This document shows positions 25,126-32,649 of a DNA stretch of 64,000 nucleotides, piece by piece. The DNA is from Phallusia mammillata. Its lineage: Eukaryota. A program made the position numbers and the translations under genes. The notes beneath the pieces were generated by a model. That model made no database searches. It was given only the letters and a program-made list of their open reading frames with translations, and was not told the DNA's origin. Each line of letters opens with the position of its first letter. The stretch's first letter is position 1. The stretch lies in NCBI GenBank assembly GCA_965637545.1, contig OZ281498.1:5952001-6016000 (forward strand), in the 5' to 3' direction.

Positions 25126-25709
25126 TTATCTGCCGTGAAGGATTTTTCCACGATGCTCAAAACTACAGAAAGACCATCTGTTGCCAACAGTTTCGAATGA
25201 CTTTGTTTTCATGTCAGCATTGACTTGAATGTCTTTAAATTCACCAGCGACCATAAGAATTCCACACGAGGACAGAAACAAACCCAATACAGACTGAAAC
25301 ACAATCTAAAAAAAACATTTCAATTTGAAATTATTGGCTGGTTTTTTATTTGGTTTACAGTTAAAAAAATTAAATACTGAAACAAATATGGGATGCTACA
25401 AATTTTCACAAAATATATACGCTGGTTCATTTTTTATTTCTTCATACATTTTTTATTTCTTACTGGACAGTTGTAGCATAAAAAATGTAAAGTTTGTCAT
25501 ATTACTTACATCAATTGGAAGAGAATAGAACTCTTGTTCAGTTAAGCGGACAAATGATCGATCTAAAAATCACAAAACATTTAAAAAAATCAGCAGTAGT
25601 ACATACATTTACATATTTCAATAAACTTACGCTGCGCAGCAGATATACCAGCATGGACAATGCAAGCAAGACCAACTATCAAAACAATCTTCTTAAAAGT
25701 TTGCTTCAT
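25126..25709 (-). CDS. MMGT1: ER membrane protein complex subunit 5 / membrane magnesium transporter 1, 103 aa, 3 exons (not in ORF track)
   Basis: Exons 25709-25631, 25562-25510 and 25305-25126 give [103 protein letters not shown]. This matches the EMC5 signatures AHAA.SAAQHR, LPIDIV, AGEFKD and F.HRG. Confidence 0.95.
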
Positions 25710-26462
25710 TATTTAGCTAGTTTAAAAGACATGCTACAAAAGGGGTAAAGGCGTAAAGCACAAAAGCTGCTTGAAAGTATGAACAACGCTTGTTTGGTTA
25801 CCATTTCTCTATAGCCTAAAACGAGTTGAGACACGAGAAACATAACCATTGTCCTAATTCCTAAAACGATTAAACGAAGGCGAAAAATACGATTTCGAAC
25901 ATGCACAAGTATGACGTCACAGAAGCACGGACGTGCTGTTTTAACATTTCTATAAACAATAAAATATGAATATTTTTTAACTATTAGAGAGAAGTCAGCA
26001 CATCGTTTAAATCTCTACAAAACTTGATATGTTTAGTTTTAAAAAATAGTTTACAAACAGTCCTTTAATTTTGACCAGCACCTTTGGCTTTTGACATTGT
26101 CAATACATATGTAAAAGAAACGATAAATGTCTAAAAAATGTTTAGTGAAAAATATCATTATGAATTTCTAAAAATAGTTTTATCCCACCTTGACACCATG
26201 TTGCGAAATTATGGTTTTGTAATGCGATTGCGCAAGTCAGAAAAAACGAGAAAATGTTTTGCTTTTAGGGAATTCCCCAAACAACAAAGAGCCGAAATGA
26301 ATTGTCAACAAAAGTATTTTTGAAGACAAGTATAATAGTAATTAGTAACATCTCGCTCAAAATGCGGCACGGAAAGTGATATAATGTAACAAACGGCGTG
26401 TGACTGAGTTTTTGGTGATTATTGTTGCAAGAGGTTTAGCAAAATTTCAAACTATTTTCTTG
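25710..26462. promoter_or_regulatory. Divergent promoter/5' UTR region for EMC5-GPN2 (-) and LENG9-TRPT1 (+)
   Basis: Head-to-head genes; CRE TGACGTCA at 25912-25919; a probable non-coding exon ends at 26462 (G|GTAAGT) and splices to the acceptor at 26629. Confidence 0.55.
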
Positions 26463-26630
26463 GTAAGTTTGGTAAAAATTGTAACTTTTTTAAGCACCTA
26501 AAAATATGCGGATTTTTAAAAATATTCACTTAATTGTGAATGAATGAATGAATGATACATCAAGAGACCTAAGCTGTGTTTCACAGTGTGTCATGAGTGG
26601 TAAAACATATAGTGATGTGTTTTCTGTAGT

Positions 26631-29600
26631 ATGATTTGTTTGAGTTACATTAAAAAATCTTTAAGAAAAGTTCCTATTCCCAAACTAATAAGGCCAGGTG
26701 CAGTAGTTTCAATATTTGACAAACCTCACCTCATTATGGATGAGCAAAAAGGCCAAACTTCAGACAAACCTTCAACTGCAAATACTGGAGAAGAGGCAGA
26801 AGTGCCGACCACTTCACAGAAGGAACAAAAACCTTTGCAAAAAATCAGACTTGCAGCAGTATTTGATAAACCTCCTGCTCCAGTCAAAACACCAACATGT
26901 CAGAAAAAGCCACCAATGAAAACTGCACATGATGTGATCAACAGGTTTGTAGGTTGCTATCTATATCACTGGTTCTCAAACTTTTTTTATAGTTGGGACC
27001 AAATGATAGTTTTTTAAGTGTGCAGGGAGCCGCAAAAAAGAAACCTTGATTAAATCACTAAAGATTATTATCTTTAAAGCGAAAATAGCAATCTTTGGTG
27101 GTTTTCTAAGGTTTGGTGGGAGTCGCAAAATAAGTGGTTGGGAGCCACATGCGACCATGAGACCCGCATTTGACAATCACTGATCTAAATCATTGTTATT
27201 TATGTACACTTAATGATTTTTAACAGAGTCAAGTGGGATGAATCACTTTCCCCTGATGAATTCTGCGTTGGTTATACAGATCGCTTTGATGGACTTGTTG
27301 AAAAGCCGTTTGCAGATTTAAATTGGGACATAGATATAGCTGGTGTTGGCCCAGATATTTTTTGCATTCCTCAACACAGAATTCAATACTTCAAACGGAA
27401 TGACCGAGTAGTTTGGGATAAGTCAAAACGACTGGACAATGTTTTTGGATCAACTAAAGGATGTGTTAAAATTCATGATTTAAATGGTGAAAATCATCCA
27501 GATGACCTTCAGGCAGAGTGTATTGAAAAAGAAGAGAGTTTGCAGGCTAAGAGTGAGGAATACAAGGGTCCTTCTCTCAATCCAGGTTTGTTGTGGTGTA
27601 ATGACCTTTGGTTCTTATGTTTGTTATAATTCTACTCTTAAATATTCATGTCATGCCCTCTGAATACTGAAGCATTATTGTGTTGCTGTTGTTAAAACAA
27701 ACTTTATTGCAGGCTCTTCAAGACCAAACTGTTTTATTGGTTTCCTTGTTGATGCTCTTGAAGTACGTCAGAGTGTACATGCTTATTACAGAAAAGTAAC
27801 TGAAATGGCCAACCAGGGCAATGTTGCACAGGAGGTACAGTCAGCTTTCGTGCCACTAAAGAAACTGCATGTTAGTTTTTGTGTCTGTACAGTTAACATG
27901 GAGGAGTTACAGACTGTAAAAGAGGTATGACGAATTTTGTTAATAAAATTCTGATATTCATACCAACGAATGGGTGCATTTTGTAGATAACTCAGCAAGT
28001 ATGTGAAGATGCAACCTCAATACATGTCAACTTCAGAGGTGTTGGGGAATTTGGACAGAAGGTTAAATATGCTGTGCCTGATGCCCCTGGGTTACATGCC
28101 CTTGGTACCCGTTTGCAAGAAAAATTAACTGAAGCTGGGATCAACATGCAAGGTAACTTAATATTTTGGTTTGCCAAGCACATGTAAAAATCCCCCCTTT
28201 TTTCAGGAAACTTCTCGCCATTCCAGCCCCATTTGACTTTAATAAACTTCAGAGGTTCTGCTCCAGCACCCGAAATTTCCAGGATTTTGAACAACAAAAT
28301 GTTTACAAAATGGGTTTTTAAGCATCAAGTTTTAAATAAATTTGTGATATGTGAAATAGGATCCACAGGAGCAGATGGTTTTTACAACACCTTTGCAACA
28401 TACAGACTAAAAGATACTCAGGTGTGAAAAATTGCATAGGAATAGTACTCAGAACACAATTACTAAATTTTCTTTTAATTTATATCATACATTTCTCAAT
28501 ACAATTTGCTGTATTTTGCACACTTTTGAACAAAGTGGCAAATCTGTACACATTTGTCACTTTTTAAACTGTTGATTTTATTGTTTCAGAGCCAATCTGC
28601 CAGTAGTTCGTTGCACTGGGACACACCACAAGGTATAAAAATACATAAATGACATTATTTTTTACTCTAACATTTTGGATACATACAACAGATTCAAGTT
28701 TTGAACACTTTCAACCAGTAAGGAATAAAAAACAAAAACCTCAATCAAGAAACAGGAAAAGGTACTGTAGTTAATCAATATTTTTAAAAGATGTTGTGCC
28801 AAATCTGGCTATTAGCATACTTCGTTTAATTGCTTAGTGATGGTTAATCCCTATTGTGGGCATTAAATTAGAAAATTATTTATTTTCATGATTTTTGTCC
28901 CAATTCCGTCTGCTAATTTGTTAGGCGATAAACCTCTGCACTTACTTTGTTAATTTTTTTAAAATTTCTATGCAGTAGTTGTCTATGATTAAAATACATT
29001 TTTCTAGATATCATAACAATTTGAAAAGAGATGTTGAGATTGGGAAGGCACTGGGTGCAGTACTCAGACACAACAAGTTTGGATTCAAAGTTGACTCAGG
29101 TATCATGAAGCTTTAAAGTTTTTGTGTGAATTTTATAAACATTATGTTTTTACTGTGATGTTGTGGATAGCTGTTGGCAGACACTATACTGATGCTGTAA
29201 CTGTACTACATAGTACATACCATAGTGTGCTATAACCTTTGGTACTGTGCATGACTGCATGCTATAGTGCCAATATCCAGTGGTGGGATTCAAATTTTTT
29301 TTAGCCGGTTCTGTTACAAAATCCATTCACAGTAACCAGTAATGCTAACCAGTTCACTGATCTCATAAAATTTCGTGAGACGGTTCTATAGAACTGGTGC
29401 GTACCGGCTGAATCCCACCACTGCCAAAATCTGTAGCTAGTTTTTGTGTATTTAGGAAACATATTTATATGACTAGTGATGTTAACAGGCTTCGTTTCTG
29501 CCGACTGTGATGAATAAAAATAAAAGTTGTAGAAGCAATGAGGATAGTGTCAAGGCTCAGATGATGTTGTTAGACCAATTAATTAATATAATTAAATGCA

Positions 29601-32600
29601 GGAGTAACATGGTACTAAAATCAAAGAGGTTTGCAGTAATCATAGCATCACAATGTTTTTTCATGTAGCATACAAAACGAATAGAAAGTGACACAAACAC
29701 TATAATTGAGTAAACTTTGTAGCATTTTTCCCCTTTTGACATATTTGCGTCAAATGCCTGCATAAAGGGTGGCAAAATGTTTACTGTAACTTTGGCTTTA
29801 CAGGTGGTTACGTGAAAATAAAGGATATCCTGGCACATCAACATTTCTCCAAAACGCTGAATGTGTCAAGAGACGACATTTACAGGGTAGTGAGGAACAA
29901 TGACAAACAAAGATTTGTTATTGTGGTGGATACATTGGGAGTTGAAACTATCAGAGCTACCCAGGGCCACACTGTCGCTGTAAGTTAAGCACATTAACAT
30001 TGAATACTATGATGGGAGAACGGTCTATTACTGTGTTCACTAAAACAGTGCGACTTAGAATTTAGAATAGAATATTTTACGAACACAACTTTAAAGCACA
30101 GGCCGTTACGTTTTAACCAGAGATGTACCGAATATCCGAATCTTTTTTAAACACACATTCAAAGCGTTAAACTCGTCTTTTTTGCTTAGTACCAACGAAA
30201 ATCGCCTCAATTATCATATTTTTTGACACATTATCGTTTTTCCCACTGCAGACAAAAATCAGTAATTTATTGTCGGGTTGGAAATCATGCTTAAGGCAAT
30301 GTTAAACTCACAGAATTAAATAGGGGACGAAACACAACTATTCTGCACCAACTGCCTGGTAAAAAAGCATTGTTTTCATGTCAAACGCATAGCGTAAGAC
30401 TTCGCGTGACCTCATAATGATTCGGTTGATTCGGCCGATTATATTCGGCAAAACCGCCGAATATTCGGTTTCGGCCGAATCGAAATTTCGCCGATTTGGT
30501 ACATCACTAGTTTTAACCTAATTACGTACCACCACAACTCTTTCAAGAGCAACAACTAAAATTGCGTTAACTGTTGCAATTATTAAATCCTTATCGTTTT
30601 GTCCATTTCTTACAAAGATCAGCAATGCATTTGCAACGATGCCCGACTAATATCATACTTTAACATAATTACCTTTGCAGTAACATCGCTGTTGGTTTGG
30701 TAGAAAAATATGTTTTTTATGTCATGAGCGTGGTGTGCGACTTCGCGTGACGTCACAAACGATTCGTTTTTTGATTTGTTGACGTCACAAACGATTCGGC
30801 CGAATTATTTGGGAAAAAACTGACAAATGTTCGGTTTCGATCCGAAACCAATTCAGCCGATTCGGTGCATTACCATTGCTAACCAAGTACGTTCAAAGCA
30901 GAGGTGTTAGTTGACCTACAATTGTGGCCCGAACCCGGCTGAACACGACTGAACCCCAACCGAAAACAGTCTTAAAATGACGTACCGAATTTAAACGAAG
31001 TGTATTGTACGAAAACAAGTTGAGTTGAGTTGAGTTGAGTTGAGTTGAGTTGAGTTGAGTTGAGTTGAGTTGAGTTTATTTCGCTTGGTGAAAGAAAACA
31101 TAGCGACACTGTAGCACTAAAACAATCACCAAGCCGGAAATAGCTGCGCAACATTAAAACGGTAAAGGGCACAATTGGTGGATGATACCAAAACGCGCTG
31201 CAGCTACACCGTATTATAAAGCGTTATGTGACCGGGGCTCACAAGAAAGTGAGGTTGGCGCAGTGTTGGTAAACACGACTGGGGAGGGAACGTTGGTGGG
31301 ACCAGTCAAGGGGGGCCTATTAACTAACCACCCGTGTTAGGGAAAGAGGGTGGGGTTCGACAGGAAAAGAAACCACCGAAAGAAACCCTGTCGGATAGTT
31401 TCAAGCGCCGGAAGGAAGATCACACTCCATAGAGCTTCATTTTTAAACTCTGGCCCCAACCCAATAGCCCTTATTATCGCAAGCATTTCACAAATCAAAA
31501 TTTTCTTGTTTGATGAAATTTCTCTCAAACCTGAACTCCCTAGGCTTTAAAAGTTCAGCAAATAATAATAAAAAAACACGAAAGGAGCATAAAGTTCTAC
31601 CTAATGATTTACATTTGTGATATAACTATTTGGCGTTAAGGTGGATAACTTGGAGTTAGAAGAAATTACAGACCCTTCCCAATTTCCCACTGTGGTACAT
31701 GGAACGTTTTGGAAATTTTGGATTCCGATTTCCGTCCAAGGACTTCATCGAAGAAACGTCAGCACCGTAGTTGCATGTCTACTAGAAGATGTCGATAAAA
31801 TTAACAAAATGTTTTTTTTTCACGCAGAGAATACATATCCATATGACTACAGCAGAGCCAACGGATGGAAACGGTGTTATCAGTGGAATGCGGAAAACAT
31901 GTAATTTGTTCATATATATCGACATAGCGGCAGCAATGGCAGGTAAAGTATTAGTTTTGGTAAACTTCGTAGGCTTCATGTAATTTTTGGAGTTGACATT
32001 TAATTGTACAATTATAATCAACCTGTTAGATAGGCGCGCCGTTTTAATTTAGTCGTAACCAACTTGTGAAATGGGGAGTGAATAGCATCATTTTTATCAA
32101 CCACGCCAAGAGAATATTCAGCGCATTCACTTTCTGCTCACAAGGTTGTGGGATTAAAATTTTTGTCAGCCGGTTGTATCACAAAAGTCATATTTCCATT
32201 GACAGTAAGCAGTAAAGCTAACCGGTTCGCTGATCTCATAAAATCTCGTTAGGACTTATTGTGAGCATAACGCATTTAGGCGTTGCCCAAGCACCGAATA
32301 TAGAAACTTTTTTCCAATTTTCACGTAGATGGAATACGATTTTTTGTTTCTTCTAATGGAGTGATACTCTCGACAGGCGATGATATGGGATATTTGTCTC
32401 CTAAATACTTTATTAAAGTGATAGGGTCAAGTAAAAAGCAACGTAAGTGTACTGTATATTTTTAAAATCTTTGCCCACTAAACTAGTTCATTTCCAGGCA
32501 CTACAGTGTTTGATAGAGAAAATGACGAAGCAGTTACTCGTTATTATGAAGCAATGGATGAAACAGACAAAAACGAGGACGTTGATACTAGTGAGCAACC

Positions 32601-32649
32601 GCAGCCTATGTCTCCAGAAGATTCAAGTACATCGACCGAAACTGAATAA
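26631..32649 (+). CDS. LENG9-like (MJ1316/DUF504 + AKAP7-type 2H phosphoesterase) fused to tRNA 2'-phosphotransferase Tpt1/KptA (TRPT1); 714 aa, 13 coding exons
   Basis: Exons 26631-26944, 27227-27585, 27713-27924, 27987-28152, 28207-28421, 28590-28632, 28692-28761, 29008-29099, 29804-29979, 31641-31757, 31828-31942, 32329-32442 and 32498-32649 sum to 2145 nt in one frame. MJ1316: MKTAHDVINRVKWD..VGYTDRFDG..IPQHRIQYFK. 2H: RPNCF, LHVS, PHLT. Tpt1: LRH, NDKQRF, IRATQGH, VVHGT, HIH, SGMR, SNGVILS. Confidence 0.9.
26967..27182. mobile_element. hAT (Buster/Charlie-type) MITE, 216 bp, splitting the MJ1316 coding region
   Basis: Ends CACTGGTTCTCAAAC / ATTTGACAATCACTG; TSD atctatat/atctaaat (7/8). 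Confidence 0.8.
29278..29423. mobile_element. hAT MITE, 146 bp, with perfect 15-bp TIRs
   Basis: CAGTGGTGGGATTCA / TGAATCCCACCACTG; TSD ccaatatc/ccaaaatc (7/8). Confidence 0.9.
30118..30509. mobile_element. hAT (Ac-type) MITE, 392 bp
   Basis: Ends CAGAGATGTACC / GGTACATCACTA; exact TSD gttttaac/gttttaac; clustered TTCGG/CCGAA subterminal repeats. Confidence 0.9.
30700..30872. mobile_element. Diverged right-end copy of the Ac-type MITE family
   Basis: Parallels 30360-30509 (GACTTCGCGTGAC...GATTCGGCCGA...TTCGGTTTCG...CCGATT.GGT.CAT). Carries a duplicated TGACGTCACAAACGATTCG at 30748 and 30780. Confidence 0.6.
31018..31076. repeat. (AGTTG)n pentanucleotide microsatellite, ~12 units
   Basis: Directly visible in the sequence. 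Confidence 0.98.
31018..31550 (-). mobile_element. 5'-truncated LINE/SINE-like 3' end (stem-loop, AATAAA, tandem tail); 5' boundary uncertain
   Basis: On the minus strand a 9-bp stem (31134-31126 with 31091-31083) precedes AATAAA (31080-31075) and (CTCAA)n. This layout is typical of CR1/L2-type tails. The region is more GC-rich than flanking intron. Confidence 0.5.
32145..32250. mobile_element. Truncated second copy of the 29278-29423 MITE family
   Basis: GTGGGATTAAAATTTTTG..AGCCGGTT..CAGTAA.CAGTAA.GCTAACC.GTTC.CTGATCTCATAAAAT parallels 29283-29372. Confidence 0.7.

What the first reader, a model, noticed from the sequence alone, without database searches (positions are those of the whole stretch)
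26631..32649. LENG9-TRPT1 fusion: a candidate single-chain RNA end-healing enzyme (MJ1316 + 2H phosphoesterase + Tpt1)
Seen: 13 exons form one 714-aa frame. Both 2H His motifs (LHVS, PHLT) and the Tpt1 Arg-His-Arg-Arg tetrad (LRH, KQRF, IRA.QGH) are intact. The three linker exons before the Tpt1 domain contain no Met, so Tpt1 has no start codon of its own. Known: in humans LENG9 and TRPT1 are separate, unlinked genes. 2H enzymes of the fungal/plant Trl1 pathway open 2',3'-cyclic phosphates to 2'-PO4/3'-OH, and Tpt1 removes 2'-PO4 using NAD+. Animals splice tRNA with RtcB, which leaves no 2'-PO4, so the substrate of animal TRPT1 is unclear. MJ1316 is a predicted cyclic-end recognition domain. 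Inference: this is a Rosetta-stone link in which MJ1316 binds cyclic ends, 2H opens them and Tpt1 removes the 2'-phosphate (or ADP-ribosylates ends), implying LENG9 may feed TRPT1 in other animals too. I cannot confirm that this architecture has not already been catalogued.
Basis: partly seen in the sequence, partly recalled or inferred. Interest (0 to 1): 0.92.

Follow-up and report, generated by a model that had tools for sequence, protein, structure and literature searches.

The report
Ascidian LENG9-TRPT1 fusion gene
In the sea squirt Phallusia mammillata, a LENG9-like gene (RNA cyclic-phosphate-end binder plus 2H phosphoesterase) and the NAD-dependent RNA 2'-phosphotransferase TRPT1 are joined into one 714-residue protein, as they are in two other sea-squirt orders, which ties two poorly understood animal RNA-end enzymes together but is already in public databases and untested biochemically.

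Summary
Thirteen GT-AG exons (26631-32649, + strand) give one 714-aa frame: MJ1316, a 2H phosphoesterase with both His motifs, a roughly 30-residue disordered tether, and a complete Tpt1 domain.

The window is from Phallusia mammillata. A public protein of this species (CAB3260711.1 / A0A6F9DFL6) is colinear with the model: 714 aa, 11 substitutions, no indel. Its naming fits a de novo embryonic transcriptome, so the fused mRNA very probably exists.

My own RNA check confirmed only introns 1-4. The contigs of four runs left exons 6-9 uncovered.

RefSeq also predicts the fusion in Styela clava and Clavelina lepadiformis, so it spans three ascidian orders. No stand-alone tunicate TRPT1 was found.

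- In-frame ATGs lie in introns 6 and 7.
- The fourth catalytic Arg is R589.
- Styela's 2H domain is degenerate.
- The HxS serine is polymorphic (S279N).
- 2H enzymes also hydrolyse Tpt1's product Appr>p, so the order of action is open.

Elsewhere, LENG9-type modules are fused to kinase and HAD RNA-repair domains. This is a new variant of a known kind, moderately interesting, with an unproven mechanism.

The parts
26631..26944 (+). Exon 1: start codon, low-complexity N-terminus, first residues of MJ1316. An AG lies 1 nt upstream of the ATG (possible trans-splice acceptor, inferred).
   Evidence: intron 1 junction seen in RNA contigs of X9 and X19
27227..27585 (+). Exon 2: MJ1316 domain (RNA cyclic-group end recognition)
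   Evidence: Pfam PF04457 6.9e-19 on the exon alone; AF2 pLDDT 87-97; RNA contigs
27713..27924 (+). Exon 3: first third of the 2H domain with motif LHVS (H277 at 27868-27870, S279 at 27874-27876). S279 is polymorphic: G27875A gives Asn.
   Evidence: variant in RNA run X9 and in P0001
27987..28152 (+). Exon 4: middle of the 2H domain
   Evidence: introns 3 and 4 seen in an X9 contig
28207..28421 (+). Exon 5: end of the 2H domain with motif PHLT (H359 at 28230-28232). The donor CAG|GTGTGA carries an in-frame TGA at 28425-28427, at the position where stand-alone LENG9 homologues end.
28590..28632 (+). Exon 6: linker, predicted disordered
   Evidence: present in public protein P0001; pLDDT about 30; no RNA contig coverage
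28692..28761 (+). Exon 7: linker. The peptide SSFEHFQ resembles NEFEQYQ of the Styela linker exon, and the split-Arg junction to the next exon has the same phase.
28649..28651 (+). ATG in intron 6, in frame with exon 7 and preceded by a stop. It is a possible start of a stand-alone TRPT1 if intron 6 is retained.
28985..28987 (+). ATG in intron 7, in frame with exon 8 (MIKIHFSRYHNN...), 9 nt after a pyrimidine-rich AG. It is a second possible stand-alone start.
   Evidence: sequence
29008..29099 (+). Exon 8: start of the Tpt1 domain with R480-H481 (29066-29071)
29279..29424 (.). MITE-like element in intron 8 with terminal inverted repeats (AGTGGTGGGATTCA). It is not part of the gene product.
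   Evidence: (very high contig depth)
29804..29979 (+). Exon 9: Tpt1 core with R527 (KQRF) and IRATQGH
   Evidence: Pfam PF01885 4e-13 on the exon alone
31641..31757 (+). Exon 10: Tpt1 (HGT motif)
31828..31942 (+). Exon 11: Tpt1 with R589 (RIHIHM), the fourth catalytic residue
32329..32442 (+). Exon 12: C-terminal lobe of Tpt1
32498..32649 (+). Exon 13: acidic, disordered tail and TAA stop, overlapping an AATAAA

Best explanation
This is a genuine fusion gene of ascidians. A LENG9-like gene (MJ1316 followed by a 2H phosphoesterase) and TRPT1 lie head to tail. A splice donor placed immediately before the old LENG9 stop codon joins them, through one or two short exons coding for a disordered tether, to the first conserved Tpt1 exon. 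The product is one polypeptide: MJ1316 - 2H - tether - Tpt1.

Shown here: the frame, the domains, the intact catalytic residues, and the recurrence in three ascidian orders.

Inferred: the fused mRNA itself, from a public transcript-derived protein.

The most likely function, also inferred, is processing of RNA ends that carry 2',3'-cyclic or 2'-phosphate groups:
1. MJ1316 holds the end.
2. The 2H domain opens the cyclic phosphate to 2'-PO4/3'-OH.
3. Tpt1 transfers the 2'-PO4 to NAD+, either at the terminus or after ligation.
4. The 2H domain may additionally hydrolyse the Appr>p that Tpt1 releases.

The most constrained and universally kept parts are Tpt1 and MJ1316, so targeting of Tpt1 by MJ1316 is the core of the arrangement. 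2H catalysis is an accessory that Styela seems to have lost.
For: Gene structure:
- 13 GT-AG exons give 714 aa.
- Pfam finds all three domains.
- The Tpt1 domain matches human and mouse TRPT1 structures by sequence (2e-40) and by fold (TM 0.89-0.90).
- The 2H domain matches drCPDase, AKAP18 and LigT by fold.
- AF2 gives three confident domains and a disordered stretch at 422-451.

Evidence for the fused mRNA:
- Public Phallusia protein P0001 (CAB3260711.1) is colinear with the model: 714 aa, 11 substitutions, no indel.
- It is named after the best Ciona hit, which is the naming rule of the Velvet/Oases de novo transcriptome in PMC7237864.
- Four of its substitutions occur in RNA run X9.

Recurrence:
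- The same architecture occurs in Styela clava isoforms X1-X3 and in two independent annotations of Clavelina lepadiformis.
- The intron before the first Tpt1 exon has the same phase in all three species.
- No stand-alone tunicate TRPT1 of 140-444 aa was found.

Constraint: allelic amino-acid differences per 100 residues are Tpt1 0.5, MJ1316 0.9, 2H 1.8 and linker 4.2.

Functional context:
- LENG9-type modules elsewhere are fused to AAA_33 kinase, HAD_SAK_1 and R3H RNA-repair domains.
- A 2H-KptA partnership in RNA repair is established (PMC9503650).
Against: - The junctions 28421/28590, 28632/28692 and 28761/29008 were not seen directly. Contigs of four RNA runs cover exons 1-5 only, to 28294.
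- No junction-spanning fragment is in the protein collection.
- That P0001 is transcript-derived is inferred from its name and alleles, not read from the record.
- In-frame ATGs in introns 6 and 7, and an in-frame stop right after the exon 5 donor, would allow two separate products.
- Human Tpt1 is ineffective on terminal 2'-PO4 (PMC6573784).
- Styela's 2H lacks the first His (LNVN) and its C-terminal third.
- The HxS serine is polymorphic in Phallusia.
- AF2 shows no confident inter-domain packing (pTM 0.43).
Confidence: 0.6

Rival explanations
1. These are two neighbouring genes rather than one. A LENG9-like mRNA ends just after 28427 (Q-V-stop), and a separate, possibly trans-spliced, TRPT1 mRNA starts at ATG 28649 or 28985. 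The 714-aa form would then be a rare read-through (conjoined) transcript or an assembly or annotation merger.
For: - An in-frame stop lies 1 codon after the exon 5 donor, at the position where stand-alone LENG9 homologues end. The same holds in Clavelina (2 codons).
- In-frame ATGs lie in introns 6 and 7.
- The Styela linker exon has an ATG 8 nt after its acceptor, and the Clavelina linker has Met residues.
- RNA contigs do not cover exons 6-9.
- Ascidians have operons and trans-splicing (lead from note s1-392405, not tested here).
Against: - A 714-aa protein with exactly these junctions is on public record from a different individual, and its naming fits a de novo RNA assembly kept only if seen in more than one assembly.
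- All three RefSeq isoforms of Styela and both annotations of Clavelina are fused.
- No stand-alone tunicate TRPT1 was found.
- In Phallusia none of the three acceptors is followed by a usable ATG, and the first Met (M594) lies after three of the four catalytic residues.
Confidence: 0.15
2. The fusion is real, but the 2H domain acts after Tpt1 rather than before it. [quoted passage not shown]
For: - The 2H family is known to act on Appr>p generated by KptA/Tpt1 (PMC9503650).
- Tpt1 produces Appr>p (PMC6097658 abstract).
- This order needs no terminal 2'-PO4 activity, which human Tpt1 lacks.
Against: - The 2H domain here is of the LENG9/AKAP7 type, not the Cpd1 type.
- In other animals the same module is fused to a polynucleotide-kinase-like P-loop and HAD phosphatase without any Tpt1. 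That points to RNA ends as its ancestral substrate.
- It sits next to MJ1316, which Pfam describes as an RNA cyclic-end binder.
Confidence: 0.2
3. The fusion is real, but 2H catalysis is dispensable or decaying. What selection keeps is MJ1316 as a targeting module for Tpt1, for example for 5'-phosphate ADP-ribosylation of RNA or for removal of junction 2'-PO4 made by an RNL-type ligase.
For: - Styela retains MJ1316 and Tpt1, but its 2H has LNVN and PHVK motifs, lacks the C-terminal third, and gets no Pfam 2H hit.
- The S279N polymorphism lies in the Phallusia catalytic motif.
- The 2H domain carries about three times more allelic replacements than Tpt1.
- TRPT1 ADP-ribosylates RNA 5'-phosphates (PMC6582358 and PMC9458441).
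Against: - Both His motifs are intact in Phallusia and Clavelina.
- The 2H fold is predicted with high confidence.
- The 2H domain is still far more constrained than the linker.
Confidence: 0.2

Closest known systems
Human and mouse TRPT1 (PDB 7yw3, 7yw2); yeast Tpt1 (7yw4)
   Same: The Tpt1 domain is 40% identical, with fold TM 0.89-0.90. The catalytic Arg-His-Arg-Arg are present (R480, H481, R527, R589).
   Different: Here the domain has no start codon of its own within the exon model. It is the C-terminal half of a 714-aa protein that begins with MJ1316 and 2H.
LENG9 (amphioxus CAH1272946, vertebrate LENG9)
   Same: The order MJ1316 then AKAP7-type 2H is the same, with LHVT/PHxT motifs. The stand-alone proteins end exactly where exon 5 ends.
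   Different: Phallusia lacks the RWD and CCCH modules found N-terminally in amphioxus and vertebrate LENG9 (Styela keeps RWD). The stop codon is bypassed by a splice donor, so the chain continues into Tpt1.
Fungal and plant tRNA ligase pathway (Trl1 CPD domain, Tpt1, Cpd1); amphioxus BfPNK/CPDase plus BfRNL
   Same: A 2H cyclic phosphodiesterase and Tpt1 act in one pathway on RNA>p and 2'-PO4. A chordate with a 2'-PO4-dependent ligase is known (PMC10946426).
   Different: No kinase or ligase domain is present here. In the classical pathway the 2H and Tpt1 steps are separated by ligation and the enzymes are separate proteins.
'Swiss Army Knife' type multidomain RNA repair proteins (Pfam HAD_SAK_1 context), e.g. 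Halichondria LOC135341864 and Nematostella LOC5520568
   Same: The same LENG9-type MJ1316 plus 2H cassette is fused to further RNA-end enzymes.
   Different: Their partners are an AAA_33 P-loop kinase, a HAD phosphatase and R3H, not Tpt1. None of the listed ones carries PF01885.

Membership tests
Tpt1/KptA RNA 2'-phosphotransferase (PF01885) | Significant match to the family profile over its full length | tested here: met
   PF01885 1.9e-52, profile positions 1-177 of 177; phmmer 1.9e-40 to human and mouse TRPT1
Tpt1/KptA RNA 2'-phosphotransferase (PF01885) | Catalytic Arg-His-Arg-Arg tetrad (yeast R23, H24, R71, R138; numbering from my own knowledge) | tested here: met
   R480, H481, R527 and R589 align with the corresponding motifs of yeast, human and mouse Tpt1
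Tpt1/KptA RNA 2'-phosphotransferase (PF01885) | Two-lobed Tpt1 fold | tested here: met
   AF2 pLDDT about 90; Foldseek TM 0.89-0.90 to 7yw2 and 7yw3
Tpt1/KptA RNA 2'-phosphotransferase (PF01885) | NAD+-dependent removal of RNA 2'-PO4 | not testable with these tools
   Needs a biochemical assay or yeast tpt1 complementation
2H phosphoesterase superfamily, AKAP7/LENG9 type | Profile match and 2H fold | tested here: met
   PF10469 9e-14 and PF13563 2.2e-10; Foldseek matches to drCPDase 5h7e, AKAP18 2vfk and LigT
2H phosphoesterase superfamily, AKAP7/LENG9 type | Two H-x-T/S motifs | tested here: met
   LHVS (H277) and PHLT (H359) in the window. The allele in P0001 and X9 has LHVN. Clavelina is intact; Styela is not (LNVN, PHVK)
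2H phosphoesterase superfamily, AKAP7/LENG9 type | Cyclic phosphodiesterase activity | not testable with these tools
   Needs an assay on RNA>p and Appr>p
MJ1316 domain (PF04457) | Profile match over the full domain | tested here: met
   1e-24, profile positions 1-75 of 75; pLDDT 87-97
LENG9 orthologue | Full LENG9 architecture (RWD and/or CCCH, MJ1316, 2H) ending after 2H | tested here: not met
   There is no RWD or CCCH in the Phallusia protein, and the chain continues into Tpt1. The MJ1316-2H core is shared.
Single-transcript gene fusion | mRNA molecules that join the last 2H exon to the Tpt1 exons | tested here: inconclusive
   Not covered by the contigs of 4 RNA runs. Supported indirectly by the colinear public protein P0001, whose naming fits a de novo transcriptome.
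Trl1-type RNA healing and sealing enzyme | Polynucleotide kinase and ligase domains | tested here: not met
   No kinase or ligase family among the Pfam hits

The most novel reading that the evidence does not exclude
In ascidians the only source of Tpt1 activity is this single chain. It performs a complete NAD+-dependent healing of RNA 2',3'-cyclic phosphate ends to 2'-OH/3'-OH: MJ1316 binds, 2H opens, and Tpt1 removes the terminal 2'-PO4. If so, LENG9 and TRPT1 would form one so far unrecognised RNA 3'-end repair or maturation pathway in animals generally, including humans, where both genes lack a known physiological role.
Probability: 0.2. Interest if true: 0.8.

Novelty: new variant of a known kind. 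Interest (0 to 1): 0.55.

Why it matters
TRPT1 and LENG9 are conserved animal genes without an established physiological substrate. Papers from the Shuman laboratory state that the roles of Tpt1 outside fungi and plants are unknown (PMC8051265, PMC6573784). A fusion kept in three ascidian orders is a Rosetta-stone argument that the two act on the same RNA ends. It also supplies a natural single-chain protein on which the order of reactions can be tested directly.

Two things limit the weight of the finding. The partnership of 2H enzymes with KptA/Tpt1 in RNA repair is already a textbook idea. The proteins are already in UniProt and RefSeq, although I found no paper that discusses them.

Tried and rejected
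1. RNA support for the fusion junctions. Read laying on 26500-30000 with X1, X4, X9 and X19 gave contigs for exons 1-5 only and nothing on 28295-29190 or exon 9.
2. A search with the junction piece P0001:385-525 for RNA-derived fragments gave no hit.
3. The search for stand-alone tunicate TRPT1 found none. The best hit, P0248, is a Tara metatranscriptome protein without 2H or MJ1316.
4. The Ciona orthologue (LOC100175594) could not be retrieved, so I cannot say whether Ciona is fused.
5. Burroughs & Aravind 2016 (PMC5062991) is the paper most likely to have listed this architecture. It is not held.
6. Literature searches for LENG9 with Tpt1, for MJ1316, and for LENG9 with cyclic phosphate found nothing relevant.
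7. Loci of close MJ1316 homologues (L006-L008) and 80 metagenome Tpt1 loci show no linkage of the two halves.
8. An operon with an upstream gene: no obvious coding ORF lies on the + strand in 25200-26630.
9. The MorphoSeq supplementary text does not mention the gene.
10. AF2 gave no confident inter-domain arrangement (pTM 0.43).
Full report
**What is in the sequence**

It has 13 exons, a 2145-nt CDS, 714 codons and a TAA stop, with every intron GT..AG. The exon coordinates are listed under parts.

Pfam was scanned exon by exon, because spliced proteins could not be typed in. It finds MJ1316 in exon 2 (6.9e-19), weak AKAP7_NLS/2H signals in exons 3-5, and Tpt1 in exons 8-11.

On the full-length public protein the same three families are clear:

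| Domain | Pfam E-value | Residues |
|---|---|---|
| MJ1316 | 1e-24 | 96-170 |
| AKAP7_NLS (2H) | 9e-14 | 229-418 |
| PTS_2-RNA (Tpt1) | 1.9e-52 | 466-643 |

The 2H motifs are LHVS (H277) and PHLT (H359). The Tpt1 catalytic residues are R480, H481, R527 and R589.

An AlphaFold2 model built on a 70-sequence alignment has three confident domains and disordered stretches at 1-90, 203-226, 422-451 and 686-714, with pTM 0.43. Foldseek matches the Tpt1 part to mouse and human TRPT1 (TM 0.89-0.90). It matches the 2H part to drCPDase, AKAP18, LigT and ASCC1.

**Organism and prior record**

An exhaustive profile-free search with exon 2 found one near-identical protein, P0001: 714 aa, with 98% identity over the 119-residue exon 2 query. 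It is CAB3260711.1 / UniProt A0A6F9DFL6 of Phallusia mammillata. UniProt names it '2'-phosphotransferase', and nr names it 'uncharacterized protein LOC100175594'.

P0001 is colinear with my genomic model, with 11 substitutions and no indel. It therefore comes from another individual but has the same exon junctions.

The name follows the rule of the de novo embryonic transcriptome in the MorphoSeq paper (PMC7237864):
- Velvet/Oases assemblies were made from mRNA libraries.
- Models were annotated with the best Ciona robusta BLAST hit.
- Transcripts were being deposited at ENA.

Four of the substitutions (T60S, L136F, E207D, S279N) are the very variants carried by contigs of RNA run X9. I therefore infer that the record is RNA-derived and that the spliced fusion mRNA exists. 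This is an inference about provenance, because I could not read the ENA record.

**My own RNA test**

RNA runs hold up to 0.29 of the sampled words. Contigs of X9 and X19 confirm introns 1-4 exactly. Nothing covers 28295-29190 or exon 9 in the four runs laid. Depth over the exons is low (5-10), and the tool warns that a hole proves nothing.

A search for junction-spanning protein fragments found none.

**Relatives**

A length-restricted search with the Tpt1 region returned only three proteins that combine PF01885 with PF04457:
- Phallusia mammillata.
- Clavelina lepadiformis, 1066 aa. CAK8698489 and RefSeq XP_076806644 are both 1066 aa and differ at 14 residues.
- Styela clava, LOC120328512, isoforms X1-X3 of 894-914 aa, all fused.

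These represent Phlebobranchia, Aplousobranchia and Stolidobranchia (taxonomic placement from my own knowledge).

Mapping the proteins on their loci (L001, L002) shows the same plan in each: last 2H exon, then one linker exon, then the first Tpt1 exon. The intron before the first Tpt1 exon has the same phase (two bases of a split codon) in all three species. The Phallusia exon 7 peptide SSFEHFQ resembles Styela NEFEQYQ.

Stand-alone LENG9 homologues (P0003, P0008) end exactly where Phallusia exon 5 and the Clavelina 2H exon end. If the donor is ignored, a stop follows after 1 codon in Phallusia, 2 in Clavelina and 11 in Styela. The simplest history is that a donor arose just before the old LENG9 stop and captured the acceptor of the downstream TRPT1 gene.

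A search for proteins of 140-444 aa with the Tpt1 half found no stand-alone tunicate TRPT1. The next relatives are echinoderm and amphioxus TRPT1 at 45-48% identity. The best hit, P0248 (56%), is a Tara metatranscriptome protein with a 140-aa unrelated N-terminus.

**The rival of two genes**

The evidence that two separate products are possible is as follows:
- ATG 28649 in intron 6 is in frame with exon 7 and preceded by a stop.
- ATG 28985 in intron 7 is in frame with exon 8, 9 nt behind a pyrimidine-rich AG. It would give a 262-aa Tpt1 with an N-terminus of normal length.
- In Styela the linker exon has an ATG 8 nt after its acceptor.
- In Clavelina the linker exon has several Met residues.

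In an organism with trans-splicing, separate and fused products could therefore coexist. Against a pure two-gene reading stand the colinear public protein, the uniformly fused RefSeq isoforms, and the absence of any stand-alone model. I put the fused mRNA at about 0.8 and exclusive two-gene expression at about 0.15.

**Constraint**

I compared two alleles per species. Amino-acid differences per 100 residues are as follows:

| Region | Differences | Per 100 residues |
|---|---|---|
| Tpt1 | 3/601 | 0.5 |
| MJ1316 | 2/226 | 0.9 |
| 2H | 10/553 | 1.8 |
| Linker | 7/165 | 4.2 |

Protein lengths are unchanged between alleles in every species.

The 2H domain is intact in Phallusia and Clavelina. In Styela the motifs read LNVN and PHVK, the C-terminal third of the domain is missing, and Pfam finds no 2H. 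In Phallusia the Ser of H-x-S is Asn in P0001 and in run X9. What all three fusions keep under strong constraint is MJ1316 plus Tpt1.

**Mechanism**

Established knowledge from the papers read:
- Only a subset of Tpt1 enzymes removes terminal 2'-PO4, and human Tpt1 does not (PMC6573784).
- TRPT1 can ADP-ribosylate RNA 5'-phosphates (PMC6582358, PMC9458441).
- 2H enzymes open RNA 2',3'-cyclic phosphates to 2'-PO4, and also hydrolyse the Appr>p made by Tpt1 (PMC9503650).
- Amphioxus has a 2'-PO4-requiring RNA ligase and a PNK/CPDase (PMC10946426). A junction 2'-PO4 is therefore not excluded in invertebrate chordates.

That is an RNA end-healing context without Tpt1. It favours RNA ends, not Appr>p, as the primary substrate of this 2H type.

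My best reading has four parts:
1. MJ1316 tethers the enzyme to cyclic or 2'-phosphorylated RNA ends.
2. 2H opens the cycle.
3. Tpt1 removes the 2'-PO4, at the terminus or after ligation.
4. Appr>p clean-up by 2H is a possible second role.

The order of steps and every activity are inferred. The disordered tether and the low pTM argue for a beads-on-a-string enzyme rather than a composite active site.

**Comparison and novelty**

Each domain passes its family tests. The protein is not a full LENG9 orthologue, because it has no RWD or CCCH and no stop after 2H. It is not a Trl1-type enzyme, because it has no kinase or ligase domain.

The 2H-KptA partnership is known, and multidomain proteins built on the LENG9 cassette are known, so this is a new variant of a known kind. 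The proteins are already in UniProt and RefSeq. I found no paper that discusses them. However, the paper most likely to have listed the architecture (Burroughs & Aravind 2016) could not be read.

**Verdict**

The fusion is probably real and is conserved across ascidians. Interest is 0.55.

Noticed in passing
window 27875 (codon 279): G>A polymorphism changes the Ser of the first 2H motif (LHVS) to Asn. It is seen in RNA run X9 and in the public protein P0001, so a catalytic-motif residue segregates in the population.
   Followed up: partly
window 29279-29424 and 32195-32252: A MITE-like element in intron 8 with terminal inverted repeats (AGTGGTGGGATTCA). RNA contig depth runs into the hundreds to thousands and many contigs branch there. 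A second, 88% identical fragment lies in intron 11.
   Followed up: partly
window 31018-31077: A (GTTGA)n microsatellite of about 12 units lies inside the 1.66-kb intron 9. That intron also holds two copies of a roughly 60-nt repeat with CGATTCGGCCGA motifs (30357-30417 and 30698-30758). The intron is probably transposon-derived.
   Followed up: no
P0010/P0241 (Halichondria panicea LOC135341864), P0019, P0047, P0069, P0070, P0129, P0372 (Nematostella LOC5520568): LENG9-type MJ1316 plus 2H cassettes are fused to an AAA_33 P-loop kinase. Most of the longer ones also carry HAD_SAK_1 and R3H, and one has a weak tRNA_lig_CPD hit. These are large RNA-repair-like proteins of 746-1614 aa in early-branching animals.
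   Followed up: partly
P0248; loci L003-L005 (Tara metatranscriptome, ERR1712136): This is the closest Tpt1 outside ascidians (56% identity). It has a 140-aa unrelated N-terminus and lacks the four residues RHNK that include the catalytic Arg-His. All three contigs begin 2 nt before the first ATG.
   Followed up: partly
L002:967-5676 (Clavelina lepadiformis): The gene directly upstream of the Clavelina fusion gene, on the same strand, encodes a 983-aa protein that also carries an AKAP7_NLS 2H domain.
   Followed up: no
P0153-P0163, P0313 (Logan, ENA and JGI proteins): Other Tpt1 fusions of unknown organisms: Tpt1 with PF04603, Tpt1 with the PF00929 exonuclease, and R3H with Tpt1.
   Followed up: no
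window 26616-26633: The start codon is preceded by TTTTCTGTAG and one base. This looks like a trans-splice acceptor directly before the ATG. RNA contigs begin 30-40 nt downstream, so it was not tested.
   Followed up: no
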